Shown here: in pieces, positions 24,268-46,063 of the stretch | How positions within the stretch are numbered: the stretch's first letter is position 1 | Layout: the number at the start of each line of letters is the position of its first letter | From: Selaginella moellendorffii | Lineage: Eukaryota; Plantae; Lycopodiophyta | Reading direction: 5' to 3' | NCBI RefSeq assembly: GCF_000143415.4 | Contig: NW_003314313.1 | Coordinates: forward strand, 266,418-330,417 | Length of the DNA stretch: 64,000 bases | Notes under the pieces: generated by a model | Told to the model about the DNA's origin: nothing | Seen by the model: only the letters and a program-made list of their open reading frames with translations | The model's database searches: none | Made by a program: the position numbers and the translations under genes

Positions 24268-27200
24268 AAAGCTAAACATAACAAAGTTATGCTCAACAAG
24301 TGATCACTAAATGATTTTCTATGAATCCATCTATAGCAAGACGTAACTCACTTCATAACAAGCCCAAAAAGAATCATCAATGATCAATATATTCCAATAT
24401 TGATCACTAACTGTTCTTCTTATAAAGCTAATATAATCCACGACTAAATCACTTTTCAAGGATAAATTAAAGCTCAACCCCTACTAAACAATCTCGTCTA
24501 GAACATAACTAACTCAACTTGCCATTTAGTTCATTTGAATGTCAACATAATTGCTAACTAGCAAATGCATGAATGCTAACAACATAAAGTTATAGCTTAA
24601 TCATCAACACTATTTTCATCAAAACTAATGAAACTCAATATCAATCCTTAGGAGAAACATTTCATCTCACTTGAATCTCAACATCAATAATGTCAATGAC
24701 AAAGCATCACTTCAATGCCATCAACACTAAAATATGAATCACCACTCAAAGCTCTCCAGCAATCAAGCTAACCAAAGTTGAAAATACCTTACTCAGTATC
24801 CAAGACTAAACCTTTAGCAAAACTCAGTTATAGATAACACGTCATCAAGGAGTGATTCACCACATCCAAGACTTAATGAAATCTAACACCACGAACTAAA
24901 CATAACCAAATGATATCAACAAAGGTGAAATCAATATGCCAACATAGAAAAACCATACAAGCCTATGACACGATCCTCCACAACACCATCCAGTAAAGCA
25001 AGCTCATTATTACTAATTTATCATTAAGTGAAGCAAGTGTTAACAGTCCTTGACAAAGTCTATAAATAATCACTAGTCACAAAGCAACCAACAATCATCT
25101 TTCAACCTGCCTTCACAAGACCCAAAGACTAAACTCATGCTATCAAGTTATATACTTGTCCAACATGAACATAATACTTCATGTATGAGATAAAGGTTCA
25201 TGGACAAGCATGAACTAAATGACCATTCGAATCCAACTCAACTACAATAAGTTTAATGCGTTTAGCTAATAGCTTTGAGCATGCTTTGAAGAGGCTAGCT
25301 TTATATAATCAACACTTAGTCAAAGACTCATATTGGTACACAACCTCCACTTAAACAAATTTATAATATGGGTACTAGCATTTCAACCTCAAACAACTAA
25401 GTTGGACCTCATTATCCTTAGCTAAGGCACACTAAGACCAAGTCAAAATCAGTGAGAGCTCACTACTCTTATAGAGTTTAATGAAATGCAAGGTGCAATC
25501 TGCCACCAAGCATAATGCTAAAAGAAAAGCATAAGGATCACCTTTCTAAAAAAGTGTAATGACCATTTTTTTACACCAGCTCCAGACTCTATCCAACTCA
25601 ATTGCCTTAACCCCAAAAGTCAGCAGTCCTTTTGGGTTGTATCATACAAAGTACCTACTAAAGTCTAAGTTAACTAAAGTCAACTCCAACCCCTTCACTA
25701 GTTTATACTGGCTTACGAAAACATAAAGGTTTTCAAGCAAAGTGATCAACAAATCAGCCATTGGAAAAGTCTAAGAAAATTTGTGGAATTTTTCCATCCT
25801 AGAGAAAGAATGACTCTTAGTTTAGGAATACAAACTTTCAAGACTCAATAAACTTCCTCCTACCTACAATTTCATATAGGTTCACTTCAATATAAATTTT
25901 TATGACCCAATAATATGCTTAAGCATTGAACTTCATGCCCATTTTTTCTAACATATGTAAAATGCAAAATGAATATCAAGGCTTGATCACGAACACCATA
26001 TCTTCGGATATCCATATTGCACTAACACTCTTCTTCAACCACCTTTAAAATCCAATGTGAAGCCAAAATATTAATAAGAAAAATGATATGGAAAATCAAG
26101 ATCCAAGAAAAAACTCCTTATCACTCGAAATAACAATGCCACTTTCACTAACACAAGTGTTAACAATGTCAATGCCTCAATTACACACCTTCTCCATTTA
26201 ACAATTTACTCCAAATGCTAACAAATTCACCAACAAGCCATAGCAAATGAATGCTATAATTTTTCCTAATACCAAATGGGCAAACCCTCAAGGAAACAAG
26301 GTACCAACATAAGCTTAGCATAATTGAACCACCATTGAGAATCTAATCAAGGTTGCTTCAATATTACTATTTGCAAGTAGACTAACTTCACTATCAACCA
26401 CTTTGGGGTTAATCATTGTTTAACCAAGCAACTTCGTAAACATATTGCTCAATCATATGGATATGATATAAGTATCACAATGACTTGATCATCAATTGAG
26501 CAACATCATGAGTAACACTCATGTCATTACTTCAAAGGTTTATGTGACTATCAAGTGCCAACTCGATTTGACAAAATGCAACATAAATGCCACACCACAC
26601 CAATAGAGATTTACAATACTTAACACCACTAACTTTTGTTCACAACACGGACAAACTCATGCCACTCTTTTTTGACCATACTCAAAACTAATCTAACACT
26701 AAGGTATTCAAGGAGCAATAGCAACGTTCCCTACAAAAAAATTGAGCATTGCAACCCAAATCTTCAATATTAAGCTTAGACAAAATGGTATAACGTTCCA
26801 CCGCTATCCATCCCACAACTCACCATTTGTAAAACCATCATTTCCAACATGCATCAAGGTAGGGACTCTTGATTGCATAATGTGAACATGAGCAATGAGT
26901 TAATAATTTATTGCAAATCATCTCTCCAAGAGAAAATGATATACGTGTTTGATCCTTCGTCCTTGATGACTCTCTTTTTGGACTTTACTTTGACTAAACC
27001 TCAAGCTTACTTTCACATTGCCTTCAGTCCAATCCAAGAAAAGTTTATGAGAGAGCACAATAATAACTACTTGAACCAATAGATTAATTTTTATAATCTT
27101 GATTGATCTGTTTATAATTATGCCTAGGAAGGATCCACTAGTCCCATGCTAAATAGCTACAGACCAGCTTATTTGCCACTCATAGCAAACCTATTCACCC

Positions 27201-27404
27201 ACGGTATATGGAACAACTCATGGAACCACCAATAGGCTAACATTAATCCTGCTAACTCAAAATGTAACCTTGAGTTGCTAATGTGCCTCACTCACAAACC
27301 CAAGCGCAAACTCATACTAATGTGCCTCACTCACAAGCCCAAGCACAAACTCACATAATATAGTACAAAAGGTAACCAAAATCCATACCCAAGGAACGAA
27401 TATG

Positions 27405-30400
27405 TGTAAACAACAAATTTTTCCATTCTACTTTAGTCACTTAACCATACTTCCGACCACTTGGAGGAGTCTCACTCACAACCTCCATAAGTCCTATTTC
27501 AGACTTGGCTTGCTAGCCCTAAGAATGGCATCCCCATCATTCAACTTTTGCACTTGGTCTAAGTGCTCCACGTGACCAATCCGATGACCGACACCCCAAA
27601 GTACCAACAACATATCAGCCTGTTACGCTAAGGCCATGCCCCTTTACCTTGGTCACACCGGTGGTCTAACACCACCTGCATCATAGTCCCGTCTCTCAAG
27701 GACAGGGCTATCCGTCCATGAGTGATCATTCAAGATCCACTCTTTAGCATCCTTAGGATGCCCATAGACATAGGGATTAGCCCAATATCCCTTTTTCAGT
27801 CCCCACCAAGTCCTTTTCTACCCATGGCTATGTTCGCCAACACTGCCACTGGATTGAGGCCCACAGGCCCGACCACTAAGTCCCATGGTCCTCTGGGACT
27901 TCCTCACCACCCAATTGTATCCTTGGTCACTACACCAGAGGATTATTCCTCTTCCTTTCCACAGTCTGGGCCTTTGGGACAACATTTCAGAACACTGTGG
28001 CCCTATGCGGGCCTCATGGGTACTCTCCTTGCCTTCCGCCTTTGGGTGCTCTAGCCATGGGCTTAGAGCGAGGTTCCATTGAGCCACACTAGGTATCCAA
28101 GTAGGTAGTGCCACCCACATTTGGACTGGGAGCATCGGCCAGTCGATCTCTCGGGGGAACTAGAGCCGGCTCTTGAACACTTCACCAAGCTACCCCACTT
28201 GTCGGTCCGTGTTCACTCTAGTATTGGACTTCCCAGTGGGCAGCTCATCACCTAACACTGGATAAAGCCTTCTTGGGCCAAATTGGCCTTTCTTGGCCAA
28301 ACTGGCTCCACTACAGTCCTCCCCCTACTATACTTTTGGAGCTCACTAAACCCCCCAGGGTCTGGGAGACGAACGCTTTGGGCTTTCACCCTCTCGGACT
28401 CGGACTCAGACTCGGACTCGGACTCGGACTCGCGCTCGGGCTCGGGCTCGGCAATTTATCCCCCATAAAGGTATATCTAACTTCCTTATGCCATTAAGAA
28501 GTCTTGGGTAGCTACCTTCTACCAATTTAACTAATTATCTTGCACCTTTTGTTTAGTTGCCTCATAGTTGTTAAGTTTTACAACTCATTGCTAGTGCTTC
28601 CACACCTCTATCATTTTTTTGGTCACCATACTCTACCACATGCCTTTCAGCTTAGGCTATGCCATTCTCATTTCCATTGGGATTCCCTTGGCAAGGGGTT
28701 CTTATGAACCCACTAAAATAACCTCAAGGTATCACACCTTGGCATATTTGGTGTCTCTACACCATTGGCCCCACAAGCCTATTTTTATGACACTACTTAC
28801 TAGTGTCTAAGTCTTTGCCAAAACCAATATAGTTGTTTCTCATGCTAACTATCCGTTAGCACCGCACTAGAATGTTTACGGTAACTCTGGGCCAAAGTTG
28901 TTTTCTTCTGGGAATATCTTTCCCACAACTTTAGTATGGCACATTCTACCATTAATGAGATACCTACTGTTCTCATACTTGGATCTTATGATCCTCCCCA
29001 TATCTCATGGGGCACCATACACCTAAGTCCAAATGCTTCAACCAATCCCTTAGGACCATTCCCTGACTCCACTTGAGTCATTCAGCATTTTGGACTTTGC
29101 TAATCCAACAACCTGCAAGGTCTTAATCTTCGAGGTGCCAACTCTCTGGAATATAACTTCTTGTATTCATGTCCTACTCACAAGGACAATCTTTGTAAGT
29201 GTTACTCAGACACTTGATGATTTTCTTAGGGCTAACCTTTGCCCCTTAGGACTATTTGTCCATATGATGAGAATAACAACTCATCTTTAAATACACCCCC
29301 AACTCTTTGGGTTGTTCCAGCATTTATTAGAGGTAGCCTGGCTACCATTTCAAGGGCTAGTGTCCTTTTCTATATTTGACCTCCCACGGTCACTAATTCC
29401 GGTCTCAAATTTATGAGTACCAACCTCAACTATATAAGGGTAATCTTGTGACTCCTTTATTGTTTTGGAGTTCGCATCTTTCCCGTGATCCTAACTGTAG
29501 TTGTTTACCACAACTACATCAGCCAGTTTGCTAAGTCAAACGCTCATTTGGATCACATCCTCAACTTTCTAAGGAAACCCTTATACTGTTCCCAAGATCC
29601 CAAAGTCGTTCCCTTACTGGCCCTTTTCTATCCACCACATCGCACCCAAGTTCACGTATGAACTTGAGTGGAGAGCTATGTTCTCTCGACATGCTACTCT
29701 TCAAGGATAGGCCCACTCCTAGGACCTTCTGATGCCAACATCAATGGTGATATACTTGAGCACCAATAAAAGTCGAACTAAGGAACAGCTCCGATACCAA
29801 GTTGTAAGTGACTAATTTTTCCATTCTACTTTAGTCACTTAACCACACCTCCGACCACTTGGAGGAGTCTCACTCACAACCTCCATAAGTCCTATTTCGG
29901 ACTTGGGCTTGCTAGCCTCGAGAATGGCATCCCCGCCACTCAACCTTTGCACCTGGTCTAAGTGCTCCACATGTCCAATCCCATGACCGACACCCCAAAG
30001 TACCAACAATATATCAGCCTATTATGCTAAGGCCATGCCCCTTTACCTTGGTCACATCAGTGGTCTAACACCACCTGCATCACAGTCCCGTCTCTCAAGG
30101 ACAGTGTAAGCTCCTGAGTTTGGATTTCCCGGGAGGTCACCTAGCCCAGTACTATTCAAACCCAAGGACACTTAACTCCAACTATCCCAAGACCCTTAAC
30201 CGATTAGAAAAGGGGGTGCACTCTTATTCATGGGCCCTTTCCCTCTATATTTGAACCCTATGAATCGTCTCTCAAGTCGTTCTTTTTGGTTGCTTACAGA
30301 CAGGGCCATTCGTCCATGAGTGATCATTCCAGATCCACTCTTTAGCATCCTTAGGATGCCCACAAACATAGGGATTAGCCCAATATCCCTTTTTTGGTCC

Positions 30401-31557
30401 CCACCAAGTCCTTTTCTGCCCATGGCCGTGTTCGCCAACACTGCCACTAGATTGAGGCCCACATGCCCGACCACTAAGTCCCATGGTCCTTTGGGACTTC
30501 CTCACCACCCAATTGTATCCTTGGTCACTACACCAGAGGATTACTCCTCTTCCTTTCCACAGTCTGGGCCTTTGGGACAACATTTCGGAACACCGTGGCC
30601 CTACGCGGGCCTCATGGGTACTCTCCCTACCTTCCGCCTTTGGGTGCTCTAGCCATGGGCTTAGGGCAAGGTTCCGTTGAGCAACACTAGGTATCCAAGT
30701 AGGTAGTGCCACCCACACTTGGATTAGGAGCATCGGCCAGTTGATCTCCCTGGGGAACTAGAGCCGGCTCTTGAACACTTCACCAAGCTACCCCACTTGT
30801 CGGTCCATGTTCACTCTAGTATTGGACTTCCTAGTGGGCAGCTCATCACCCAAAACTAGGTACAACCTTCTTGGGCCAAATTGGCCTTTCCTGGCCAAAC
30901 TGGCTTCACTGTAGTCTTCCCCCTACTATACTTTTGGAGCTCACCAAACCCCCTAGGGTCTGGGACATGAATACTTTGGGCTTTCACCCTCTCAGACTCG
31001 AACTCGGACTCGGACTCGGACTCGGGCTTGGGCTCGGTCTCAGCCTTGGCCTTGGTCTCGGTGTCGGTCCCGGTCTCAGTCTCAGTCTCGGTCTCGGTCT
31101 CGGTCCCGGTCTTGGTCTCAACCTCGGACTCCATCTCAGGTCCTTCTCAGACTCCATCTCGGACTCCATCTCAGACTCCATCTTAGACTCCATCTCGGTC
31201 CATCTCAGACTCCATCTCGGGTCCATCTCAGACTCCATCTCGGACTCTGTTTCGGTCCATCTTGGACTCCATCTCGAACTCCACCTCGGACTCCAACTCA
31301 GGTCCATCTCGAACTCCATCTCAAACACTTCCACGTGTCATGTGTTGGTCCTTTTGGGTCCCTTTTTGGAGCCTCGCTTATTGCTCACTTCGTGCTTGTT
31401 CCTCAAGCACTTTGTTGGGAGTTCCACTCCCACTCTCGACCTTTCAAATCGGAGCTTTCAGTCCAAACGTGTTACACTCGTTTGGCTTTTGCTTCGGCCA
31501 CTACCACGTGGTGCCCTTCTGGCTCCACTTTGGGGCCTAGGGATTTTGTGTCTCACA
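27405..31557 (-). mobile_element. Internally deleted family-B LTR retrotransposon
   Basis: Full 5' LTR 29804-31557, reverse PBS gctccgatacca at ~29788, partial 3' LTR 27405-28450, TSD atatg/atata. Confidence 0.75.
30105..30298 (-). mobile_element. Cassandra-type solo LTR containing a 5S rRNA internal promoter core
   Basis: TG…CA ends, perfect 5-bp TSD gacag, absent from the other family-B LTR copies. The reverse strand reads GTTAAGTGTCCTTGGGTTTGAATAGTACTGGGCTAGGTGACCTCCCGGGAAATCC, matching 5S box A-IE-box C. Confidence 0.88.
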
Positions 31558-34500
31558 ATATAAAGCCTTTGCACCCAAACATGTACCCACTAGAATCATC
31601 ATTTTCATCTCTGCGTATGCAATGAGACTAATTGCTCAATCTCATTGGATAATACTTGCCGAGACTCATCCTCTGATACCAAATGCAGCACACGTGGTTT
31701 TCACCCTTTATCCTATGGTGATTTGCCATAGGACAACCACGAAGTGGAACTTAAACCCTCTATGTGCCATATGTCACATGTGACGTGTCCAAAAGATAGT
31801 GGTGTGGAACTTGAGTTTCAAAGCCTTGGGCCACTGAATGAAAGAATGGACAATCGTTCTTTTTTGTTTATGCAGTTGCTACCTTCACTAAACACAATGT
31901 GACAAAATTGGATATTCAAGAATAGTCAAGTATATTTTATTATTTAACCAATTAAATCTCAAAATGCTAAAAGTGTTATATTTTAAGTTTTGAATTATAT
32001 AAGCTATATTTAATTAATAGTGTTTATAATTTCATGATTATAAATTAAACAACTAGGCTCTGTACAATGCTGTCATTTGCATCAAAATCAATCACACACA
32101 TCAATCAAACTCCAAGATGACCTTAGGCTGGCCATTGTTGTAATTCACCATCACCACATAGAGCTTGGGCTTCCAAGATTGATTTCCTCGCCACTCTTGA
32201 CCCTAGGCAAGACATTTGCAGCACACGAGAAGCTCTTGCTTGTGGTGTCAAATGTGAAAAGATTCGGGGAGTGCAAGAAATCCTTGCAAAGCAGCTTGCT
32301 ACCAATCACCATAGGCTTTGACAAAACCCCAAACTCTCTGGAGTATTCAGAATATTCTTCTCATGGGTGTTTATACACCTTTCTCCATCTGATTCTAAAG
32401 GTATTCTGGTTTAATGTCATAATTTCTATGAACATTTTAAAATGTGATTAATCTCAATATAAAATTATGTTAGAACTATATAATTATACAACATATCATA
32501 CTTCTTATCAGAGAATAAAGAAATAAAGTAAAAGTGAATTTTTTTGAATATGTCAACTTAAATGTATATCGACATATAGAAATCTTAAAATAATGAGAAT
32601 ATTAAATAAGATATTTATTAAGATGAACTTTTAAGTTTTTCAAGTTGTTATGACTTTCATTGGAGTACACCTAGAATATTTTAGCATATTTTAAGAAATA
32701 TTCCTCAATCCAATTTTCTCCTTCAAGTTTTAATGATAATGTTCTTACTTATCACTAATCAAGAACTTTGAAATGGAGTAAAAAAAATGATGCATACCTT
32801 TGAGGCTCTTTGCCTTCATAAAAAATGTTAAAACTAATTTTTCTCTTCATGTTTTTTTCTCTATATGATGGTCATAAGTTTTCAAATTCCTTTCTATGTC
32901 TTTTGTAAAAGGGCAAATGCAAAGAGTAACTGCAACAAGTGGCCTGGATTATTCTCAGCACAAAAGATCTCCTATTCTTGCAAAATTTTCAAACCCTAAA
33001 CCCTAAACCCTAAATTTCATCATTGTGAAGCTTAGGACTTTGGTGCTTCAGATTCACTTAAACTCTTAAAACTAAACACATCTTTTTTCTTGCTATTTTT
33101 TTCTCCTGCACAAGGTTGGGTTTTGTTTATGTGATCACAGTGAGAATTGGAATTTAAGTTCAACTCAGAGGAAAGCTTACATATGTTTCTTCCCATTCTT
33201 TGAGCATTAAAATGAGTTTTGAGTGTGTTGTACATGTAAAATGTACATGTACATGTAAAATGTAGCTAGATAAAGAGGAATTCATGACCAAAGAAAATCT
33301 GTTCTTGTGCTATGAGTCTCACTATTTATTTAAACAATCCAATGATAGGCAAATATGAAGCTAAAATCACAGGTGAATATCTTAAGATATTATGAGTAAC
33401 TTAAAAATTAGTTTTAAATCAACAGTTGTAATTATATAACAATAAACCATTTCTAATTTATTTTTAATAAAGGTTTATTGCTATTAACCTTTATTTAGAA
33501 AACAGATGCTATTAAATTTTCTTGGTATATTACTAATATTTATTACTTATAATAATCTCTGTTTCACATAATAATAATAATTAAATATTGCATTACTTGC
33601 TAGTATTCATAAGAATTAGTTTTTTATTAAGAAATTCTATTTCTTGAATAAAAAATTATGAAAACCAAAGAAAAGAAAGTATTTTCTAAGGGCAACAAAT
33701 TATTTTAACATGGGCATGAATATGTCTTTGTACACTTGATACTATAAATATATTGATTAGTTTCCTTTTATCCTTCATCCCACTTGTATATATATATGTA
33801 TCTTTCATCCCACATGTATATATGTATACATGTATTACATTTATTATTACATGTAAGAAATAATAGTAGAGTAAAAAATAAAACACAAAACATAACATAT
33901 TTCAACTATAACTTACTTGGGTAGTTTGAGTCAAGAGCTTTTTATCCATCAAATTTTATGTGAGTTTTAGCTGTCTTATGTTTAATATTAATATAAGTTT
34001 TTTTAACATTTAATTATAATTATCGTTATAATTAAATTATAATTACATTTAACTAATAAATTTAAGTTATAATTATTCTTAATGAAATATTCATGATATA
34101 TTACTAATTTTAAAATATTTCAGCAGTTTTAATATAATCTAAAAGTCTCATTATAACAAAAAGGGTTTTGCAAAAAAGAAAACCAAAAAGATAAATTGGT
34201 AGAGCTGGAATGAGAAAAACAAGATTACTAAGAGCTCCACAAATTCCTTCCAGCTCTTCACCCAATCAAGCAAGCCAGTGAGGAAGCCCATGGGAGCATA
34301 GTGAGCTCTTGGAAGTTTGGTCATTAAGAAGATTCTATAATAACACTATTCAATTGAAACAACATTAATAACAACACCAACAAGAAAAGCAGCATCCAAT
34401 ATAAATGAAATAATAATTCATTTTGCATTTGCCAACACAAACCAAAACACACCTAAATGAAGAATATTATATATTACCATCAGAATAATTGAAAAATATG

Positions 34501-34864
34501 AGAGATAAATTTTAAAATATACAATTATTAGTAATATATGAAGGCATAAACATGCTAAAGCAAATAGATAATAGATGTGACCAATTAAAATGTGCATATA
34601 TGATAAAATTTGGTCGTTTGGATTGTATATTTGTAAGTGATTAATATCAATTACATGGGGAATCCCCTCCAAAAATGCTTGATTTTGCTTTATATATAGA
34701 AAATAGAATAGAATATTTAATTATTCTACGTTGAGATTAAAAATTAAAATCATGGATAATTTACTTAATATATAGAAAATTAAATATAATATTTAACATA
34801 ATTTGCAAAGTTTGAATTTTTTTTTTTCCAAATATACATATTAATATATTTTAACATTCTTCCT

Positions 34865-36193
34865 TTAGCCAGCTTGGAAACTTAGGCCATCTTTCATGTC
34901 CTGTACCAAAGTCTCGAATAACTTGTCATCCCTGGTAGTTGTGGACTCCAGTGACTTCATAACATGCTCCAGCCCCCCATGGCAAGCCTTAGGAAGCAGT
35001 TCCCACCATTTCTCCCAACTCGGGCCATTCACCGGCAGCAATCCCGCAGATTTGATGAAGCTACAGTTTTCCGTGTGTCGGGCAATAAATGCCATAGCTG
35101 CCGTCCTGTTACCAAATACCACCCTCGTCTTCAACTTGACATCAAACTGCTCTTTGGCCTTCCGGGCAAAACCCAAGTTCCCATTCTTGGACCCCTTCAC
35201 CATGTCGGCAACTAGCCCCACAAAATTGGCACATGTGAAAAACACCTGCCCATACACTGAAACGTTGGGGAGCCACAAGATGCTAGCTATGGAGTATGCA
35301 TAGAGCATCACACCCGATAAGAGCAGCGCTAGCTTTCCAGGGAGTTTATCTTCTTGCTTGAGGCTCCGTTGGAAGAGTCCCTGAACCGAAGCCTCAGTGC
35401 CTTCGACAATGTGGAATGTGTCACTGTTCAAACTGTAAACGAGGCAGTCTCCCCTCTCTGGCGCACCCGCAGCAATACTTGGGTCGTCATATTTGAACAC
35501 GAGCATCGACTGTGTTGTCCACACGGCAAGTGCCATCCCGAGAGCACCCAGTGCAATGAGGCCTCCTATGAACCACTCCATGGCAACGCAAGCCATGCAG
35601 ACGATCCCTGCCGTGAGAACAAGTGGCAGCCAGCCCAATAGGAGGCCGTCTATACACTTCCCCTTGAGCTGAGCTCGAGCACCACTTGTAGTGCCTGTCA
35701 GCGATAAGACCAAGACCTCGACACTTCGACTAGCGTTTCTACCTTGTATTTTCGGTGGAGTGGCACGCTTCCACAGCCGCTTGTGCTCACTGATAAGACT
35801 GGCGCCCACAGTGTTGAGCACGGGGCATTTGGTGTTGGAATGGAGGCCCAAGTACTGGAAGCCTTGAGGGCATTCCACGTGAGGAGCAGGAGAGTTGCCA
35901 AGGGCCAATAGCTGCGCAAAACGCAGGCCAGTCATCTGGAGGAAAGATGTAGCGAGTGAGAGGCTTCCTGGGCCTACATGGCCTGTGATGCTGAAGGCAT
36001 CGTTCATAGATGAGAATGCGAAGCTCTTCCTTGCAGATTCGGTGCCCAGTGCAGAGATTAGACCCACCAGATCCAGCTTCTTTTGATCGATAGACTTGAG
36101 ATTATCCGCTGATCCGGCCTCGACTGCCGGAAATTGTGAGAGGAGCAGCGTGGTGACTTGAAGGACAAGAGATGAGGCCCACTTCCGCAGCAT
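34865..36193 (-). CDS. Uncharacterised multi-pass membrane protein, paralog A (frame open up to 36319)
   Basis: Intronless ORF in an AT-rich context with a signal-like N-terminus and several hydrophobic helices; extensive identity with 42628-44067 (KLDLxGL, NDAFSxTGHVGPGSLSLAT, CPVLNTVGAS, KGSKNGNLG). Confidence 0.85.
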   Translation of the reverse strand: MLRKWASSLVLQVTTLLLSQFPAVEAGSADNLKSIDQKKLDLVGLISALGTESARKSFAFSSMNDAFSITGHVGPGSLSLATSFLQMTGLRFAQLLALGNSPAPHVECPQGFQYLGLHSNTKCPVLNTVGASLISEHKRLWKRATPPKIQGRNASRSVEVLVLSLTGTTSGARAQLKGKCIDGLLLGWLPLVLTAGIVCMACVAMEWFIGGLIALGALGMALAVWTTQSMLVFKYDDPSIAAGAPERGDCLVYSLNSDTFHIVEGTEASVQGLFQRSLKQEDKLPGKLALLLSGVMLYAYSIASILWLPNVSVYGQVFFTCANFVGLVADMVKGSKNGNLGFARKAKEQFDVKLKTRVVFGNRTAAMAFIARHTENCSFIKSAGLLPVNGPSWEKWWELLPKACHGGLEHVMKSLESTTTRDDKLFETLVQDMKDGLSFQAG

Positions 36194-36519
36194 GGTGCTT
36201 GATTTCTCACAACCCCAGCCCCGCGCACTTGACACGGTTAGTTTGCAGAATCCAGCCCCCCTTGTTTTTCCAATGCCTCCCTGTAGCCAGAATGAGCTAG
36301 AATTTGCAAATTCTTGCACGGATTCAAGCTGCTCGTTGCATTCTATCTGTGCTGGAGCTAAGAAAGCTCAAGTACACCACTTGGATTTCCATTAGGAAGT
36401 GGATGAAATTGGGGCAAAGGGGGGATGGCAAAGACCTCTCTTTGACACAAACTTGATTTCGCTTTCTCTGTCCCCATGGCTATGTTCATGTGTGACTCAC
36501 ATTGACATCGTTGCCTTTA

Positions 36520-36991
36520 GGTTGCCTTTAGGCCCACCAGGTGTGGAAGATATCTATTTCATTAAGCCACTATATGAGCTTTGTATGATATATATCACTG
36601 TAGGCCATGGTGGCTGTTGCTGGTGATGATTTGGAAATGCATCATAGGGAGGAGGACAATCAATTTCATGTTCCCCTTGTATGATGATCACATTGGATTC
36701 CTTCCTGACTGTTCTTATCCTCCGCAGCCTCATCTTTTTTAACAGAATTTCCAGGAGACTTCAACAAATCCATGTATTCTTGCAAGATTTCTCAAATTTC
36801 TCAGCTTGATCAAAATTTCCTGTATGATGATATCCATTTTCTGGACAGCACCTGCAAATTACAAGAGCCCTTTAAAATCACTTTCCATCCACTAAAATAT
36901 ATCCCATCAGGTGTCCTTGTGAATAATCCTTCGCTGCTAGTGTGGCACTTACTGCACGTTTTCATACTCTTCACAAACCGAATCGAAAGGA
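36520..36991 (+). repeat. ~480-bp direct repeat, copy 1 (copy 2 at 44640-45127)
   Basis: Colinear match from taggcccaccaggtgtg to gaaaggag. Confidence 0.9.
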
Positions 36992-37094
36992 GTATCACCA
37001 TGGATGCAATGTTTCCTCACTACCAAATCTATAATATTAGCAAGTAATAATAAGCATAACACAATAAATTTAATACTCAATTACTTAATTAAAT

Positions 37095-39183
37095 TCACCT
37101 AACTGTGGACTGAACCTTAGGAAGGTGATCGTAATCAATCTTTCCACTAGCTTTCATCTCCCTGTATTGTGGAAGAGCTCTGAGATGGCCAATTTTCCGC
37201 AACTTGTTGTGGCTGTCTCCCAAACATATCATGAAGAGCAAAACTTTCTCCACAACGGGGCTGTTGTTCAAGTAACGTGTCTCAAGAGAGGTTCCCAACA
37301 GCAGCAGCGAGACATTGGAAGTGCATCCGTTTGCAAAGTCCTGGTTCGGCACAAGGAGCCAACCTCGCAGGTAGTGCGATGGGTAGACATAGTTGTTCTT
37401 ACCACATGCCAGCAAATGTGGCCAGAAGGCTCGTCCCTGAAACTCGTCACCCAGCTCTTGAGATGAGTGGAAGGGCAATGCATGGCCCTGGTCCTTCATG
37501 TCGAGCACCCAAACCTCATCAGAAGCAGCTCTGAAGCAGTTATCGTGCTTCGGGTTCGAGTTGCAGCACGAGCAACAGCCTTTCCCATTTATCCTGTTCG
37601 TCACGTGTGTACAACTCCCACGGTGCTCCTCAAGTGGCAGAAGCCTTGCAGATATGAAACCGCATGTCAATGTGAGAGAGCCATCGACGCCCACGCTCAC
37701 AGATTCCACCATGCTTTTGAAGTCCACCATGTTGCTCAGACCCTCGATGGTGTCACCTTGAACAATATGACGAAGTACCTCGTTACGAGGAAGGCTCTTT
37801 CGGAAGATGGGCATCCAAGTTGGCTCTGGGCTTCGCTCCTCTGTCGAATTTATGAGTTTAGTCACAGCTTCTAGCATCACTTGAACAATATAGCGAAGCA
37901 CCTTAAGGCTGTTCCGGAAGATGGGTGTCCAAGTTGGCTCTGGGCTTCGCTCCTCTGTCGAATTTATGAGTTTGGGCCCAGCTACAGCTACTAGCATCTT
38001 GATTAGATCGTCAAGGTTGCAGCTAACCATCCCCCGTGTCAGCTCCACCAATTGCTGATTGAGTGTCCTGCCAACTTCGATTCGTTGGACACCATCTTCA
38101 CCTGTTACCCCGAGCAAACCGAGCATGCAAAGCGCCCGATCCTCTTCTAATTTGCAATCTCGATCAGCAATCTCCTTGACAAGGCCAACAGTGCCACCAT
38201 GGCAGGTGAGCCCAAGGCGGGTACCAAAGTCAAAGATATCACTGCTTTCCCCGCTGATTATGAACGCCAAGGGAATGTAGGCATTTCTGTCCATGAAGTA
38301 GAGATTCTCGCAAGATGTTCGAGCTAAGCGACCACGGGTGCACTTGTAGTCCGACTGCTGCAATGCCTTCCAAAAGTTGGCTTCGTCTTCCTGAGCAGAA
38401 CGTTGTTCTTGTTCATATGGTCCTGAGGTACTACCCCAAGACCAGCCATTGCTGCCTTTACACGCACACGTCTTCTCAACATGTATCTTCTTGACAAAGT
38501 TCACGACACTCTTCAACTGCGACTGATCCATCTCGACTATGAAGGTGAGATTTTGGGGTAGTATAAACTCCTGCAGAGTCCAAGCTCTAGAGAACCATAC
38601 CGGAGGCTGGCCGTCGTCAGCCACTGCCTTGAAACCAGATCCAAGGCCATGAAGACTAACGTAGCAACCCAGTGTAAGCGAGTAGAATTCTCCCATTCGC
38701 AATATCTCTCTCTCCTTTTCCTTCTTATCGAGCTGGTTGATGCACAGTGTGTCAAGCCAAACCAGGTCCACTCCATCCTCCTGGAGCACTTCGAGAAACT
38801 GGATCAAGCCTTTGTATCCCTTGTTACGTTGCAGGCCAGCATACTTTAGCGCTTCTTCGTAGCTGATCCTGCTCTGCCTTCTTTCCATTACCTGGGCCAC
38901 GTCCTTAGACAAGTCCTCGATGTCGCAGGTCCACCTGTGAGAAACTATGTGAAATTCCCAACTGTTCACAGCGCTAAAAATAACGCCTCCAGTAGCACGG
39001 CTGCACTCGGTTGTGCCCTTGACATTTATCACCCGCAGTGGAAACGCTTGAAGCTTGAGGTTCTTGATTTTCTGAAATGCAGAACCTTGGATGGAACACT
39101 AAGTCAGCAACAAACAAAAACCTTAAGAAACTTGAGTTACCTTCGAACTTGGTGAAGTCTGCCTTTGGGATCAAAGTTGACAT
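37095..39183 (-). CDS. HET (heterokaryon incompatibility) domain protein, ~677 aa, 2 exons
   Basis: HET motifs PLRVINV, IVSHRW, VWLDTLCINQ, EILRMGEFY, WFSRAWTLQE and RDCKLEEDRALCMLGLLGV. Predicted exon 1 39183-39141, 55-nt intron 39140-39086 and exon 2 39085-37095 give one frame. Confidence 0.88.
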
Positions 39184-40314
39184 TGAATCTGCTTAAATAT
39201 ACTGAGCTTGAAATCTAGCACTACTCAATTAGCCATGGCAGTGCCTGTGAAGGAATCCACTGTCGTATTGTCATTTGATCAAAATATAAACCTTACCTTA
39301 CTAGCTTAAGGAGATATGCCGCATGTACCTGCTGCGGGTAATGGATCAAAACGAGCTACATCATAAAGCAAATGCACGGAACCTTCTTGCACCGCTGCAG
39401 CAGTCCCCACGAAATGCTTGAGAACTGGTTCTGCCCCAAAACGCACAGTAACCCAAGTTAGATATCTCTCGTTTGACGCTTGAGGGTTTGGGATTTTCTA
39501 AAATGCAGAGGAACACAATGCTAATTTCGGAAACTTCGGTTACCTTAGAGCTTGGTGAAGTTGGACATTCTGCCCCATTGTTCTGAAACTTCTGATCCAA
39601 GCCCTTAAATACTAAAACCTAGCACTAGTTACAGGCACCTGTAAAGCTGAAGCAATGGTCCTTCAAGATGCCACAATTAAATTGCTTGTGAACCAAGTAG
39701 ACTAGATTCTCTTTAACGTCCCGATCTACCCACATCTGGTAGAATTTTATTGTAACAATTACTATCAACCACTGATTCACCATGCAATACATGAACGAAA
39801 CAGTTACTATCGGCCCGTTTAATAATGAATGGGGCTGGCGTGAAGCTTAATGAGATAAATCCAGAATGGCTGGAGCACACTGAAGAGTTCTAAAGATCCC
39901 AGCCTAGCTGATGACTTGGCACATATCTTTAGAGCGAACAGGGATGCATGGAGATATGAGGGAATTAGTATCCCGCTGGACGTCTAATTTATGAATTGAA
40001 GTTTAGTTATTTTCATGGGACTCAGTCATGTCCTTCCAAATGAATGCAGAAACAAGACAGTCCCCAAATCGGCAACCGTGATCATCGGCGTGCATGCACG
40101 TGATGGAAGTTGGAAGCTCTGAATTTGACTCCGACGACCATTGTTGCCCATGGTCCACCCTTCCAACGGTCCACAGGCTATCAAATCCGATGGTCTCCTA
40201 CTACTCGTAAATCCAGATCAAAGTTTTCTTCAGGTTCAAGCATCTCTGTAGCACTCATGGATGCCAGAGTGGATACCACATACAAGTTACGGACTGGAGC
40301 ATAAAGTTGGGGGA

Positions 40315-40790
40315 TCAATTCGCACATGAGCACCTTCGGTCTTCAAACACATGGCATGCTTTTGTCCTTGCAGACGATCCTCCACCGCTCCAGTAAATGT
40401 ATGCACATTTGCAGATTCTTCACAAACCGAAGCCTGTGTTTTCGCCAAGGCAAAAGCCAGAGCCAGCTTTCCATAATGGCCGTATTCTTTCTCGCACCTG
40501 TTCTCTTCGATGCTTCATCATAGCCACGCTCTTGCCTTTTTCAGGACAGGTCTTCAAGCTTCGCACCTATTGATCCATCGTCCACCTTTTGTACCTCATC
40601 ACTGCTTGACACACCATTACTGCATGGCTTCCAGATGCTAGAACTAGAGATTCAAACGCCAGCTGTCCGATTTCGAGATTGTTCCACTTCTGTCATGCAG
40701 CTAAGAAGGTTTTCCATATTACCAGCGATGGTTTATGAGGCATACTTCCCAGCATCTCCAAAGCTTTGTCCAGTTGGTTGGCTCGGAAGC
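40315..40790 (-). pseudogene. PPR E-DYW domain relic
   Basis: RANQLDKALEMLGSMPHKPSLVIWKTFLAA*QKWNNLEIG, then decayed KLALAFAL, LRFVKNLQMC and HVFED…CSC segments. Confidence 0.65.
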
Positions 40791-42204
40791 ATAGAGGTTG
40801 ATATTTAGAGCAACCAGTCAATAATTTAAATGCTTAAGTTTACCTCTGTTCATTAATTAAATATGCTATTTTTAATATTATCATGAATGTTATTCGTTCT
40901 ATATTTTTAATTCAAATGCACTACCCTTGCAACCACTTGGAATAAAAAAGAATGAATCTCTATTAGTTGAGTGATGGTCATAATAAGTACAAATAATTGA
41001 ATATTATATTTATACCCCATGTTCTCTCAAAGTTTTAAAACTAAAACTTTTCTCCTATAAAGTTTTAAAAAATAAAAGTCTCAATTTCCAATGCCTAGAA
41101 TAGTCAAGAAGATATTACTCTAGAAATAAAAAAAAACATTCAAACTAAATTGAGATGAAATAAAATATATATGAATGAACTTATTTTAATAATTAAAATT
41201 AAAATTATCATTAATAATTTTAAATAATTATTTAGAACATCTATATTGCTCTATTTGTTAATTCATGCATTCACAAAAAATAAATTTAAAAGAGGAAAAT
41301 ATTTCTAGTAAAAGTCTCATTGATTTTCTTTAAAATAAAAATAGAGCTAATCTGATTATTTTGTTATTTATTTGAATTAAAATATGTGGTTTATCTTATG
41401 AATAAGAACAATATACTTGTAATTTTAAACTATAAACATATTTTTCCCAACAAATGAAAATTAAAAATATTCCTAAATATTTATTTAATTTAAGAATAAA
41501 CATTTAATTACAGTATATTAAATCTTTAAAAATTACTAAAACATTCTAGCTCATTAATTATAAAGCCTTAGGCCTCTATATTATTATGACTAAAACTATA
41601 AACATAAATGTAAATCTACATTTTTAATAAAGATCTCTCATTTTATTGACTTCAAAAGTGATTTTTCCATAAAGAAAGTGTAAAATTCTAATATAAATCT
41701 CATAATGTGAGTATAATCAACTAATATATTTTAAAACATTTTTACTGAAGAATGATAAAATGCCATTTTATCATACTTCATTTGGAGTTTCTTAAAATAG
41801 TATATATTAAATAGTAAAATAGATGATTTTATTAATAAAAGCTAATTTTTATAAATTTAATTCTTATTATTTCTTTTATATAGGTTATTCAATTGACCCA
41901 TTTGCAATATATGAAAGTAATACCAATCAATAATGCAATGAATGAAAGTAATATTTTGGGTATTTGGAAATTGATGAATCAACCAAACACTACAAGACAT
42001 TATTTTTATTGCTTTTATGTATTGCATTATTGATTGAGGACAAGATTGTTTTGGTTTATTAAATGGATTAAACTAAATAACATCAAGGTGAGAGAATCCT
42101 AAAACTGTTCCTCTTTTATGACTGTAAGAGGCATTTACTTATATAGACAATGAAAAGTCTAAATTGCACTAATGTAATAACCCAAATTAGCCAAGTTAGT
42201 TTAA

Positions 42205-42218
42205 TTTTTATATATATT

Positions 42219-42250
<32 letters not shown>

Positions 42251-42308
42251 TACATACATATATATACATATACATATACATATACATATATATATATACA
42301 CACACACT
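42205..42308. repeat. (TA)n/(TACA)n compound microsatellite
   Basis: Directly visible. Confidence 0.95.
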
Positions 42309-42627
42309 ATATGTAGAGACTTCACATTGGTTTTTCTTTTCTTTTTTCCTATTTTTCCTTCTTTTAATGGCAAGAGTGATTTCTAAATAAAAACAACTGC
42401 AATAAATTATATTAGTCAAAATATTTAATTTACCTAATATTTTAGAGCATTCAACTTTTAACTAAAAGATTTAAGTACATAAAATACTAAAGTGATTGTA
42501 CAATAAAATATCTACCAGATGTAACAGAATCTACTTCGTCCTATGGTCGGTTGGTCCGGATGTTAAAGAGAATCTAGTCTACTTGATTCACAAGCATTCA
42601 TTCTTGTCATTTAGTTGTTCGCAGGCA

Positions 42628-44067
42628 ATGGTGAAATGGACACTATATGTTCATATCACAATGGTGTTTTTGTTGCAGCAGTTTCTTAAGGTATGTGCAA
42701 ACGATCTAGCTGACCGTGTCCGGTCTAGCATCAAGACGAAGAAGCTTGACCTCATGGGCCTCGTCTCCACGCTAGGAACCACATCTGCAACAAGGAGCCT
42801 GGTATTCTCATCCACGAACGATGCATTCAGTGTCACAGGTCACGTTGGTCCAGGAAGCTTGTCCCTTGCCACAACCTTGCTCCAAATGACTGGCTTTCGT
42901 GTAGGACAGTTGTTGTCCCCGGCTGCCGAGTCTAACGCTCTTAGCATGAAATGCCCCAACGGGTTGCGCTACATTGGCTTGAGCTCTAGAACCCAATGCC
43001 CCGTCCTCAATACGGTGGGTGCCAGCATCGTGCGTGAGCACAAGCAGCTGTGGAATGAGCATGACGGCGTGGCTAACGATAAGCCGGTGGGAAGAGATGC
43101 TGGTCGACGCATGCAGGTGCTGGTCCTATCAACGGGCAACATGGGGACTCATGCTCAGGTCTTGCTCAAGGGGACGGCATTAGACTGCCTTCTCCTGGGT
43201 TGGATGCCATTGCTACTCAGCTTGGGAGTCGTTTGTGTTGCTTGTGCCAGTGGGGAATGGGTCGCTGGCGCTCTTATCGGGCTAGGAACTCTGGGGATGG
43301 CACTTTCGGTGATGGTATTGAGGATCTCCTTCGTGTTCAAATATGCAGAGCCCAAAGTTGCTGACGGTGCTCCTAAGGGAGATTGCCTCGTCGTGGATGA
43401 CACGGATACTGAAACTTTGCACATTGTCATGGGTACGGAAAGCTTCATACAGGCCCTCTTCCAGCGCAGGCTGGAGCAGGAGGAAACTAAAATGGGCAGA
43501 GTGGGGCTGTTGTTCGCAGGGCTCATGCTCTACGCTTACTCAATCGCCAGTGTCTTGTGGCTTCCAAACGTGTCCCTCTTCGGCCAAATAATTTTCACAG
43601 CTGCCAATGCTCTTGGTCTGCTCGCGGACATGTTCAAAGGCTCCAAGAATGGCAACCTAGGCCTGGCTCGCAAGGCACGAGAGCAGTTTCAGTTGGCCTT
43701 GAGCGAGAGGGTGGTATTCGGGAGCCGGACCGCGGCCGTCGCTTTTGTTGCAAAGCATGCTGAAGACTGCAGTGTGCTCAAGTCCCTGCTGCCCACGCAA
43801 GGGCCAGTATGGGAGAAATGGTGGGTGCTGCTGCATCGTTACAAGCACAATATAATCAGTCCTGACGATGCGGCCTGTAACATCGATGACGACCCTCTGC
43901 TTCAAAAACTTGTGAAGGACATGGAGTATGGATTGAACTATCAGTCATATAAGATCCAAATGAATGTAGAAACAAGATCCTTTGACAGTCTACAAATTGG
44001 CAACCGTGATCATCGCATGCATGTGATGGAAGATGGAAGTTGGCAAGCTAGCAATTTGATTCCATGA
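42628..44067 (+). CDS. Uncharacterised multi-pass membrane protein, paralog B
   Basis: Intronless ORF starting MVKWTLYVHITMVFLL; paralog of 34865-36193; motifs GAPKGDCLV, LWLPNVSLFGQIIF, FGSRTAAVAF and LLPTQGPVWEKWW. Confidence 0.87.
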   Translation: MVKWTLYVHITMVFLLQQFLKVCANDLADRVRSSIKTKKLDLMGLVSTLGTTSATRSLVFSSTNDAFSVTGHVGPGSLSLATTLLQMTGFRVGQLLSPAAESNALSMKCPNGLRYIGLSSRTQCPVLNTVGASIVREHKQLWNEHDGVANDKPVGRDAGRRMQVLVLSTGNMGTHAQVLLKGTALDCLLLGWMPLLLSLGVVCVACASGEWVAGALIGLGTLGMALSVMVLRISFVFKYAEPKVADGAPKGDCLVVDDTDTETLHIVMGTESFIQALFQRRLEQEETKMGRVGLLFAGLMLYAYSIASVLWLPNVSLFGQIIFTAANALGLLADMFKGSKNGNLGLARKAREQFQLALSERVVFGSRTAAVAFVAKHAEDCSVLKSLLPTQGPVWEKWWVLLHRYKHNIISPDDAACNIDDDPLLQKLVKDMEYGLNYQSYKIQMNVETRSFDSLQIGNRDHRMHVMEDGSWQASNLIP

Positions 44068-44639
44068 CGACTGTCCTGGCCTTCCAACGGTCCACGGCTA
44101 TCAAATCCATGGGATGGGCTACCATTACTCAGACTTTTCCAGCACAAGGTTTCTGTATATCCAGATCAAAGTTTTCTTGAGGTTCAAGCATTTCTATAGC
44201 ATTCATGGATGCCAAAACTTACAAGCTATGAACTAGAGGTTAGGGGGATCTATTGACATAGTCTGTTTTCAAAAGCATACTTTTGTATGGTGTTCCTTTT
44301 TACAAAGGGCCATGTTAGTCCCATGATGCTGTTCAATGACATTTCATCCAATGTTGATATTGAACTTTTGAAGCACCATAGGTTCACATTTGCATTTAGA
44401 AGCATCAGGTAGAGTTAACACTCAAGCCCTATCCCTTATTCTCTTGTATTCCAGCCTACCATTAATATATGTCTATCTTGCTTAGATCCAAAGTATTCAA
44501 TGCCAAACCCATCCTTGCACACAACCACTCACATGAGCCTTCTTGGGGATTGAATGTCTCAAGTTAGTTACTAATTGAATTGTGTGAATCCAATGACATA
44601 GATGCTGCACACATTGACACCTTTGAGAAAGAAAATCCG

Positions 44640-45127
44640 GGTTGTCTTTAGGCCCACCAGGTGTGCAAGATATCTATTCCATTCCTTTTGATGTAAGCCA
44701 CTATATGAGCTTTGTATGATATGTATCACTATAGGCTATGGTGGCTATTGCTGGTGATGATTTGGAAATGCATCATAGGGCGGAGGACAATCAGTTTCAT
44801 GTTCCCCTTGTATGATGATCACATTGGATTCCTTCCTAACTGTTCTTATCCTTTGGCCTCATCTTTTCTAACAGAATTTCCAGGAGACTTTAACAAATCC
44901 ATGTATTCTTGCCAAATTTCTCAAATTTCTCAGTTCGATCAGTATCAAAATTTCCTGTATGATGATGTCCATTTTCTGGACAGCACCTGCAAATTACAAG
45001 AACCCTTGAAAATCACTTTCCATCCACTAAAACACATCCCATTAGGTGTTCTTGCAAATGATCCTTTGCTGCTAGTGTGGCACTTACTGCACGTTTCCAT
45101 ATTCTTTACAAATTGAATTGAAAGGAG
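44640..45127 (+). repeat. ~480-bp direct repeat, copy 2, abutting the resumed LTR
   Basis: Matches 36520-36991 and ends where family-A LTR homology resumes. Confidence 0.9.
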
Positions 45128-46063
45128 CAAAGGGATAGGACACGGAGCGACTTGGAATAGTCCTAAAGTATCTAGCATCCCAATGTCAGGACCAACACAC
45201 AAAATGGAGTTAAGTGGAGTTTGACATTATTTCACCATACTAGTGGTTTAACGTAAGGATATGGGTATTCCACCAACTAATATAGTATGGAATTTGACCT
45301 TAGACCTAAGCCAGATGCAGAACAAGAACAGGTATGCAAGTAAAAGCTAGACTATGCCTCAGGTTGGCTAGCCATGCCTAACCTACCCACTATCCCTACT
45401 ATACATTTGGAACCCCCAACACATGCTTTGGGCTTTCACCCCAAGCCTTCTTTAGTACCAAGAGTTACTCTCTGGGACAAGCTCAAAACTTACTGAATAT
45501 GGAATGTCCTTATATTGCGAATTTGGTCATATTGTGTTCAAAATAATCTTTACATTCTGTAGATATGTCAAACCAGCAAATTTAAACACTTTCCATATAT
45601 AACATTTGGAAACGGAATGAAACTAACACAAAAGGCATGATAATGAGGGTGTTTGGCAGACACGGTAAGCTATCATTTAACGAATATTGAGGGACTAAGC
45701 TCAATATCGCAAGGGTTCCAACACTAGCAAGTGCAAGTCAGCAAATGAGTTTCTCTAACCAGGTCAAATATATTTAACTAATAGCACTTAGGAATTCCGT
45801 CCTTATGCTCATCTGGTCAAGTGTATATATGAAAATTAGTTTCTCAACTAGTTTAGATGAAGACTAATAACAAGTCTAACAATACTGACTTCTTGCTATC
45901 GTGGTAATAAAGAAAAAATATCCAAAAGGACAGGCAATAAATAATTTTTGATATCCAAAGTTACATTTGCAACATACACCTTAGCATCCTTAGGATGTCT
46001 AGAGACACCTTTTTAAAATATCGTGGTAAGGAAGTCTTAGAGGATAGTAGGATTTAGTGATCA

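What the first reader, a model, noticed from the sequence alone, without database searches (positions are those of the whole stretch)
31684..45974. The HET/membrane-protein block (~13.3 kb) sits inside a split LTR of a retrotransposon
Seen: the intact LTR is 19999-21127. Its partner starts after the PBS at 31684, matches until 31850 (equivalent to 20165), stops, then resumes at ~45126 (equivalent to ~20238) and runs to the proper end tttgcaaca at 45974. The outer flanks give a TSD (cacac/tacac), and the interrupted family-B sequence continues across them (…ccacac | cttagcatccttagg). Inference: 19999-45974 is one insertion, and the block 31851-45125 arrived later with loss of ~70 bp of LTR. The genes therefore moved as a unit, and stayed open while the host element decayed. 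I see no TIR, TSD or Helitron ends on the cargo, which suggests break-repair capture or an unrecognised vehicle.
Basis: partly seen in the sequence, partly recalled or inferred. Interest (0 to 1): 0.8.

Follow-up and report, generated by a model that had tools for sequence, protein, structure and literature searches.

The report
HET gene block splitting an LTR
In the spikemoss Selaginella moellendorffii, a 13.3-kb piece of DNA carrying the genome's only HET-domain gene and two related membrane-protein genes sits inside the end-repeat of an old retrotransposon, most likely pasted there during repair of a chromosome break; this is a clear example of a known way that plant genes move.

Summary
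Window 19999-45974 (S. moellendorffii GL377617.1) is one old, non-autonomous LTR retrotransposon on the minus strand. It has a polypurine tract, an iMet primer-binding site, TG..CA ends and a 5-bp target duplication, and four paralogous family-B copies read straight through its insertion site. Its 5' LTR is split at 31850 | 45122, with 71 bp missing. Both pieces are equally diverged from the intact LTR (K2P 0.229 and 0.220).

The 13,271-bp insert carries A(-), HET(-) and A'(+). A and A' are far older than the LTR pair (dS about 2, dN/dS 0.18). A moss, Ceratodon, also has a HET homologue next to two A-like genes. The cluster therefore existed before the element and arrived as a unit.

The insert has no TIR, TSD or Helitron ends. 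Its right end is a 0.5-kb copy of the HET-A spacer, joined to the LTR through a 2-6 bp microhomology. This fits break repair with template switching, a known route of plant gene movement.

No donor copy and no second allele were found. Colinearity with the second haplotype stops at 47168, so one-haplotype presence stays open. The scan also read this stretch as s1-433177; that follow-up is withheld.

The parts
19660..19998 (+). Left half of the family-B repeat copy that the retrotransposon interrupted
   Evidence: It aligns with B1 (27405-), B2 (29803-), B3 (reverse complement of 24267-) and the right-flank copy.
19994..19998 (.). Target-site duplication, left copy (CACAC)
   Evidence: Read directly. 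The right copy, TACAC, is at 45975-45979.
19999..21127 (-). Intact 3' LTR of the host element (1129 bp, TG..CA)
21128..21140 (-). Polypurine tract, read on the minus strand, abutting the 3' LTR
   Evidence: Read directly. It is conserved in the family member on L004.
21141..31670 (-). Internal region of the host element. It has no gag/pol domain and holds family-B copies B3 (22722-24267, inverted), B1 (27405-28452) and B2 (29803-31557).
   Evidence: Self-blast. Pfam found nothing in 10 ORF pieces. B3 is absent from the L004 family member.
31671..31681 (-). Primer-binding site complementary to the tRNA-iMet 3' end (TGGTATCAGAG on the minus strand)
   Evidence: Read directly. The tRNA match is from my own knowledge of plant Copia-type primer-binding sites.
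31684..31850 (-). U5-side piece of the split 5' LTR (equivalent to LTR positions 1-167)
   Evidence: 81.4% identity, K2P 0.229
31851..45121 (.). Inserted block of 13,271 bp, with no TIR and no TSD. Its non-coding edges are AT-rich and CpG-poor.
34865..36193 (-). Gene A: 442 aa, single exon, predicted membrane protein with no Pfam family
   Evidence: The exact protein is annotated on GL377617.1. No Pfam match.
36497..36992 (+). Rep copy 1: the spacer between the HET 3' end and the gene A start, and the likely template of the patch at the right junction
   Evidence: 89.5% identical to 44617-45127, K2P 0.115
37095..39183 (-). HET-domain gene (LOC9635605, XP_024542981, 677 aa, one roughly 50-bp intron near the 5' end)
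   Evidence: Pfam HET, E 8e-11. 100% match to P0001.
40034..40266 (+). Fragment resembling the 3' end of A' and its downstream sequence. A 51-bp copy of the A' 5' leader lies at 39683-39733 on the minus strand.
42628..44067 (+). Gene A': 479 aa, single exon, paralogue of A (56% aa identity, dN/dS 0.18)
44617..45127 (+). Rep copy 2: a 0.5-kb duplicate of 36497-36992 that ends exactly at the junction with the LTR
45122..45127 (.). AAGGAG, shared by the end of rep and the LTR family. This is the junction microhomology: 6 bp against the L004 copy, 2-3 bp against the window's own 3' LTR.
45122..45974 (-). U3-side piece of the split 5' LTR (equivalent to LTR positions 239-1129)
   Evidence: K2P 0.220
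45980..46010 (+). Continuation of the interrupted family-B copy, about 30 nt before it is truncated

Best explanation
An old, non-autonomous LTR retrotransposon integrated into a family-B repeat. Later its 5' LTR suffered a double-strand break. Repair lost 71 bp of LTR and filled the gap with 13.3 kb copied, or captured, from the locus that then held the HET-A-A' cluster. In the version I favour, synthesis primed from the left break end ran through about 12.8 kb of donor (31851-44616). It then switched template back by about 8.1 kb and copied the 0.5-kb HET-A spacer a second time (44617-45127). The new strand was captured by the right break end through the short microhomology AAGGAG. Shown: the split, the deletion, the absence of transposon ends, the duplicated patch at the junction, and the age and conservation of the gene cluster. 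Inferred: the break, the order of the synthesis steps, and the loss of the donor locus.
For: Evidence that 19999-45974 is one element and one insertion:
- It has PPT, PBS, TG..CA ends and a 5-bp TSD, and paralogous B copies are continuous across the site.
- The two LTR pieces are complementary (1-167 and 239-1129) and equally diverged (K2P 0.229 and 0.220).
- The 71 bp is present in the window's 3' LTR and in the L004 copy.

Evidence on how the block arrived:
- No terminal inverted repeat, no TSD and no 5'-TC/CTRR-3' ends were found.
- Rep copy 2 ends within 0-6 bp of the LTR junction, and copy 1 continues into unrelated sequence.
- The block shares nothing with 50.7 kb of the rest of the window or with 44.8 kb of other Selaginella loci. 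In the same sample the host LTR family, family B and a MITE all recur.

Evidence that the cluster is older than the element:
- A versus A' gives dS about 2 and dN/dS 0.18.
- In Ceratodon, a HET homologue is followed by two A-like genes (tblastn E 1e-31 to 1e-36).

Known precedent: most recent gene transpositions in rice show break-repair signatures with microhomology under 10 bp and no TE signature (PMC3615480, which cites Wicker et al. 2010).
Against: - No donor copy was found, although copy-based repair should leave one. HET is a single locus (PMC4540973), and A and A' have no other annotated Selaginella relative. The donor must therefore have been lost, or the fragment was cut out and captured.
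- 13.3 kb is long for filler DNA.
- Only the right junction can be judged for microhomology, and its length (2-6 bp) depends on which LTR copy stands for the pre-insertion sequence.
- The relative age of the rep duplication is unresolved. K2P is 0.115 against 0.22 for the LTR pair, but transversions are 2.8% against 1.9%.
- No reads were laid on either junction.
Confidence: 0.6

Rival explanations
1. Two or more separate events built the insert in place. For example, a gene-bearing fragment was captured first. A later break at its right edge was then patched with a copy of 36497-36992, and either event may have removed the 71 bp.
For: The rep pair (K2P 0.115) need not be the same age as the insertion. 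Filler patches copied from nearby sequence are typical of separate repair events.
Against: This needs two breaks at nearly the same place. Both A paralogues and HET must still have come together, since all three are far older than the host element.
Confidence: 0.17
2. The block was carried by an unrecognised vehicle. This could be a transposon whose right terminus is the end of rep, or a fragment of a large DNA virus integrated at a break.
For: Both rep copies end at the same base. A metagenomic contig with giant-virus core genes (DNA polymerase B, RNA polymerase subunits, capping enzyme) carries an A-like gene and a HET gene 6 kb apart. The block genes have no introns apart from one short intron in HET, and the spacers are AT-rich.
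Against: No TIR, TSD, Helitron ends or LTR hallmarks surround the rep pair. The block has no ORF over 135 aa besides the three genes, so no transposase or recombinase. It has no other similarity to the viral contigs. The viral proteins are only 22-27% identical. The end of rep coincides with a microhomology to the LTR, which explains the shared end point. Two scans of IMG/VR found nothing.
Confidence: 0.12
3. Assembly artefact: the scaffold wrongly joins a gene region to LTR pieces from different copies.
For: The region is rich in repeats, the two haplotypes differ strongly here, and no read check was possible.
Against: The window has no gaps. A false join would fall inside a repeat, not at repeat/unique borders. 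The two LTR pieces are complementary to within 71 bp, equally diverged and in the same orientation, and the outer flanks restore a family-B copy with a TSD. DNA runs X1-X3 (2024; same organism label, and possibly the source sample) hold 40-46% of the sampled words of 37000-46990.
Confidence: 0.04
4. Two independent, truncated elements of the same family happen to flank a resident gene cluster.
For: The family has other copies nearby; one lies on the second-haplotype scaffold.
Against: This needs complementary truncation points, the same orientation, equal divergence from one intact LTR, and outer flanks that are the two halves of one family-B copy with a 5-bp duplication. Both pieces are closer to the window's 3' LTR than to the L004 copy.
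Confidence: 0.02

Closest known systems
Gene movement by double-strand-break repair in plants (Wicker, Buchmann and Keller 2010; Chen et al. 2013, PMC3615480)
   Same: A gene-bearing segment sits at a non-ancestral site, here inside a TE. It has no transposon ends, a short microhomology at a junction, a small deletion at the acceptor, and a patch copied from nearby sequence.
   Different: No donor copy is detectable. The segment is long (13.3 kb) and carries three intact genes that form a cluster conserved with a moss. The host is a lycophyte, not a grass.
Nested transposon insertion into an LTR (layered retrotransposons of plant genomes)
   Same: An LTR is split into two collinear pieces by later-arriving DNA, which gives the relative order of events.
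   Different: The insert is not a transposon. It has no LTRs, TIRs, TSD or transposition genes, and the target lost 71 bp rather than gaining a duplication.
Gene capture by Helitrons or Pack-MULEs
   Same: Host genes are found at a new site within repeat-rich DNA.
   Different: Those vehicles carry defined termini, and for MULEs a 9-bp TSD. They usually carry gene fragments. Here the genes are complete and the termini are absent.
Fungal Starship elements that carry HET-domain and other cargo genes
   Same: A HET-domain gene travels together with neighbouring genes as a multi-gene block.
   Different: The block has no tyrosine-recombinase 'captain' gene or any other long ORF, and no terminal repeats or TSD. 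It is about ten times smaller, and it is in a plant.
Endogenous giant-virus (NCLDV) fragments in Physcomitrella and Selaginella (Maumus et al. 2014, PMC4083422)
   Same: Both are stretches of up to about 13 kb of mostly intron-less ORFs in early land plants. Both block gene families also occur on a giant-virus-like contig.
   Different: The block has no viral hallmark gene, and the paper does not list HET or this locus. Identity to the viral proteins is 22-27%. The genes appear to be under purifying selection and are annotated by RefSeq.

Membership tests
LTR retrotransposon (host element 19999-45974) | Two direct long terminal repeats ending TG..CA | tested here: met
   The 1129-bp LTR matches the split partner at 81-82% identity. 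The ends were read directly.
LTR retrotransposon (host element 19999-45974) | Primer-binding site next to the 5' LTR and polypurine tract next to the 3' LTR | tested here: met
   PBS at 31671-31681 and PPT at 21128-21140, both on the minus strand.
LTR retrotransposon (host element 19999-45974) | 5-bp target-site duplication and an empty site | tested here: met
   CACAC and TACAC match in 4 of 5 positions. Four paralogous family-B copies are continuous across the site. A true allelic empty site was not obtained.
LTR retrotransposon (host element 19999-45974) | gag-pol coding capacity (autonomous element) | tested here: not met
   No Pfam domain in 10 ORF pieces of the internal region. The element is non-autonomous or fully decayed.
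TIR DNA transposon (block 31851-45121) | Terminal inverted repeats and a target-site duplication | tested here: not met
   No inverted pair joins the two ends. The target shows a 71-bp deletion instead of a duplication.
Helitron (block) | 5'-TC and CTRR-3' ends, a 3' hairpin, and insertion between A and T | tested here: not met
   The ends, read on both strands, do not fit.
LTR retrotransposon formed by the rep pair (36497-45127) | PBS, PPT and TSD around the direct repeats | tested here: not met
   None is present on either strand, and the interior holds intact host-type genes.
Break-repair (filler DNA / SDSA-MMEJ) insertion | Deletion at the acceptor, no transposon ends, microhomology at a junction | tested here: met
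   71 bp is lost. AAGGAG (2-6 bp) is shared by the rep end and the LTR.
Break-repair (filler DNA / SDSA-MMEJ) insertion | Patchwork filler that includes a copy of nearby sequence | tested here: met
   44617-45127 duplicates 36497-36992 and abuts the junction.
Break-repair (filler DNA / SDSA-MMEJ) insertion | An identifiable donor locus with matching breakpoints | tested here: not met
   No other annotated HET or A-family protein exists in S. moellendorffii (PMC4540973). A whole-genome DNA search was not possible with these tools.
Starship-like cargo element | Tyrosine-recombinase captain gene at one end | tested here: not met
   The block has no ORF over 135 aa besides the three genes.
Endogenous giant-virus fragment | Viral hallmark genes, or closest relatives that are viral | tested here: not met
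   tblastx of the block against the virus-like contigs hits only the A genes. The closest relatives are plant proteins.

The most novel reading that the evidence does not exclude
The genome's only HET locus may be a presence/absence variant carried by one haplotype only. It would be an ancient HET plus A-family module, shared with mosses, rich in fungi and present on giant-virus contigs, that relocates as a cassette and may first have entered plants from a large DNA virus or a fungus. The split LTR would then mark one hop of a mobile non-self or cell-death module in a plant.
Probability: 0.12. Interest if true: 0.75.

Novelty: new member of a known kind. Interest (0 to 1): 0.45.

Why it matters
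The split LTR works as a natural time stamp. It shows that a complete three-gene cluster, not a gene fragment, changed place in a lycophyte genome after a datable retrotransposon insertion. It also preserves a repair junction, which makes this a clean non-grass example of break-repair gene movement. In addition, the cluster is the plant's single HET-domain locus and its gene order is shared with a moss. The move therefore bears on whether HET and its membrane-protein partners act, and are inherited, as one unit.

Tried and rejected
**Read evidence**

**Look-ups that led nowhere**
- The exact look-up of the RefSeq HET protein found no contig.
- P0041, a 56-aa protein that represents the A' cluster, sits on a contig with no nucleotide match to the window. 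I treated it as spurious.
- Eighteen single-exon ORFs were tried for an allele on the left side. Only two are annotated. The relatives of the first lie on small scaffolds (L005, L006) that repeat window 1-5060 and do not reach the insertion site.
- Two IMG/VR scans for A-like genes found nothing.

**Domain and family scans**
- Pfam found nothing in the host element's internal ORFs.
- Rfam found nothing in 19000-47500.

**Readings rejected**
- The rep pair as LTRs of a nested element: no PBS, PPT or TSD.
- A Helitron on either strand.
- A tandem-duplication or circular-intermediate origin of the rep pair: sequence to the left of the two copies is unrelated.
- L004 17306-17592 as allelic sequence: it is a separate copy of a 297-bp MITE with different flanks.
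- Dating the rep duplication against the LTR pair: K2P and transversion counts disagree.
Full report
**Identity of the sequence**
- The HET ORF is 100% identical to XP_024542981 of Selaginella moellendorffii.
- Exact-protein look-ups place the window on scaffold GL377617.1, plus strand, at window coordinate + 266417.
- The window contains no N.

**The observation**
- blastn of 19999-21127 against the window returns 31684-31850 (LTR positions 1-167) and 45122-45974 (positions 239-1129).
- Global alignments give K2P 0.229 and 0.220, so the two pieces are the same age. Transitions outnumber transversions about 8:1, and CpG is depleted to about 0.35 of expectation.
- The element lies on the minus strand. 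The run next to 21127 reads as a polypurine tract on that strand. The 11 nt at 31671-31681 read TGGTATCAGAG, the usual tRNA-iMet primer-binding site (my own knowledge), 2 nt from the LTR end.
- The flanks carry CACAC and TACAC.
- When the flanks are joined without one copy of the duplication, they align with four other family-B copies straight across the junction for about 30 nt. This acts as a paralogous empty site.
- A further family member on the second-haplotype scaffold (L004 18561-19696) is continuous through the breakpoint. The 71 bp (20166-20236) is therefore a deletion in the split copy.
- The internal 10.5 kb has no retrotransposon protein domain and holds three family-B copies. One of them (22722-24267) is absent from the L004 member. 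The host is thus an old, non-autonomous or fully decayed element.

**What the insert is**
- 31851-45121 (13,271 bp) carries three genes:
  - gene A (34865-36193, minus strand, 442 aa);
  - the HET-domain gene (37095-39183, minus strand, 677 aa, one short intron);
  - gene A' (42628-44067, plus strand, 479 aa).
- It also holds small A-like fragments at 39683-39733 and 40034-40266.
- A and A' are 56% identical, with synonymous sites saturated (dS about 2) and dN/dS 0.18. They are therefore far older than the LTR pair.
- In the moss Ceratodon purpureus, a full-length HET homologue (28% identity) is followed within 6 kb by two single-exon A-like genes. tblastn gives E 1e-31 to 1e-36, with many invariant columns in the alignment.
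- The cluster therefore predates the host element and must have arrived with at least its three genes together.
- The coding sequences keep 49-53% GC. The non-coding edges have fallen to 27-40% GC with CpG at 0.15-0.17 of expectation.
- If the insert has sat there for 3% or more substitutions per site, three open frames are unlikely by chance. The probability is about 0.01 at 3% and 2e-4 at 5.7%. The age itself is not fixed.

**How it got there**
- The ends show no inverted repeat, no duplication and no Helitron signature on either strand.
- The block contains no long ORF besides the three genes.
- Nothing in the block recurs in 95 kb of other Selaginella sequence. In the same sample the host LTR family, family B and a MITE all recur.
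- The last 0.5 kb of the block (44617-45127) is a direct copy (89.5%) of the spacer between HET and A, 8.1 kb to the left (36497-36992). The homology ends exactly where the LTR resumes.
- The last six bases, AAGGAG, are also the LTR-family sequence at that point in the L004 copy. The window's own 3' LTR reads AAGCAA there, so the microhomology is 2-6 bp.
- A target deletion, no transposon ends, a patch copied from nearby sequence and a short microhomology together form the recognised signature of double-strand-break repair with template switching.
- In rice, 41 of 56 recent gene transpositions showed no TE signature and microhomology under 10 bp (PMC3615480). That paper cites Wicker et al. 2010 for the concept; the Wicker paper is not held.
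- I considered the rep pair as LTRs of a nested element or as a transposon terminus and rejected both: there is no PBS, PPT or TSD, and the microhomology explains the shared end point.

**Open points**
- *Donor.* No donor copy was found. Zhao et al. count one HET locus in this genome (PMC4540973). My searches found no other Selaginella HET or A-family protein. The word search did miss A' because a 56-aa sequence represents its cluster, so unannotated copies cannot be excluded.
- *Second allele.* None of the three genes has a second allele in the protein collection. The right-hand neighbour (50469-51341) has a 98% allele on GL377572.1.
- *Haplotype.* Colinearity between the haplotypes runs from 55386 to 47168 and then stops. 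The next 6.6 kb of the other scaffold holds unrelated DNA, a young MITE copy, and a different member of the host LTR family in the opposite orientation at another site. The insert may therefore be on one haplotype only, or the second haplotype may lie further on. I could not walk further.
No read-level check of the junctions exists, and I worked beside those places afterwards.
- *Relative dating.* K2P for the rep pair is half that of the LTR pair, but the transversion counts are similar.

**Side results on origin**
- A profile of the A family finds 172 representative clusters (81 at E 1e-10 or lower) of about 440-aa proteins.
- The Atlas look-alikes are mostly Ascomycota hypothetical proteins.
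- One relative lies on a 35.6-kb metagenomic contig with giant-virus core genes and a HET-domain gene 6 kb away.
- Identity to those viral proteins is only 22-27%, and the block shows no other viral similarity. I treat this as a lead, not an explanation.

**Verdict**
The mechanism is most likely break repair, which is a known kind of event. Interest is moderate. It rests on the completeness and conservation of the moved cluster and on the unresolved haplotype question.

Noticed in passing
L009 10001-17957 (Ceratodon purpureus CM026423.1, 21.05 Mb): A full-length HET homologue is followed by two single-exon A-like genes (435 and 437 aa, 79% identical to each other). HET followed by A on the same strand is the arrangement shared with Selaginella. 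The fern Adiantum nelumboides has no A-like gene within 10 kb of its HET homologue.
   Followed up: partly
L011 10001-19076 (Logan contig ERR15945747_1188724, 35.6 kb): This is a compact, intron-less contig with DNA polymerase B, RNA polymerase subunits, a capping enzyme and a helicase, so it looks like a giant virus. It also encodes an A-like protein (22-23% identity to A/A') and a 564-aa HET-domain protein 6 kb away.
   Followed up: partly
window 34865-36193 (protein P0037): The A family has no Pfam model, but it has 172 representative clusters in the exhaustive search. Its ESM Atlas look-alikes are mostly Ascomycota hypothetical proteins of about 436 aa.
   Followed up: partly
window 46066-46362 and L004 17301-17597: A 297-bp element with terminal inverted repeats of about 70 bp looks like a MITE. 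A 98.6% identical copy sits at a different site on the second-haplotype scaffold. Each copy is flanked by its own 4-bp direct repeat (CTTT and AATG), so the family was active recently.
   Followed up: partly
window 47168 / L004 15024 (GL377572.1): Colinearity between the two haplotype scaffolds ends here. To the left, the other scaffold carries unrelated DNA and a different insertion of the host LTR family in the opposite orientation.
   Followed up: partly
window 22722-24267, 27405-28452, 29803-31557, 19660-19998, 46358-46791: Family B is a repeat of about 1.1-1.8 kb with five copies in the window, three of them inside the host element. One copy is absent from the related element on L004, so B looks like a mobile element of its own. 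No coding domain was found in it.
   Followed up: partly
window 37757-37998: The HET gene carries an in-frame tandem duplication of about 114-120 bp (80-91% identical). It repeats a segment of about 40 aa, KLINSTEERSPEPTW..PIFR.
   Followed up: no
window 39683-39733 and 42546-42596: A 51-bp segment just upstream of the A' start codon is repeated (88%) upstream of HET, in the same orientation relative to each gene. This may be a shared leader or promoter piece.
   Followed up: no
protein clusters of A' (P0040/P0041): The 479-aa A' protein is filed under a 56-aa representative from an unrelated contig. The word-based protein search therefore cannot see it, which is a caution for claims that relatives are absent.
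   Followed up: yes
window 42328-42363: These places tripped the filter of the reads tool. They lie in the AT-rich microsatellite region upstream of A'.
   Followed up: no
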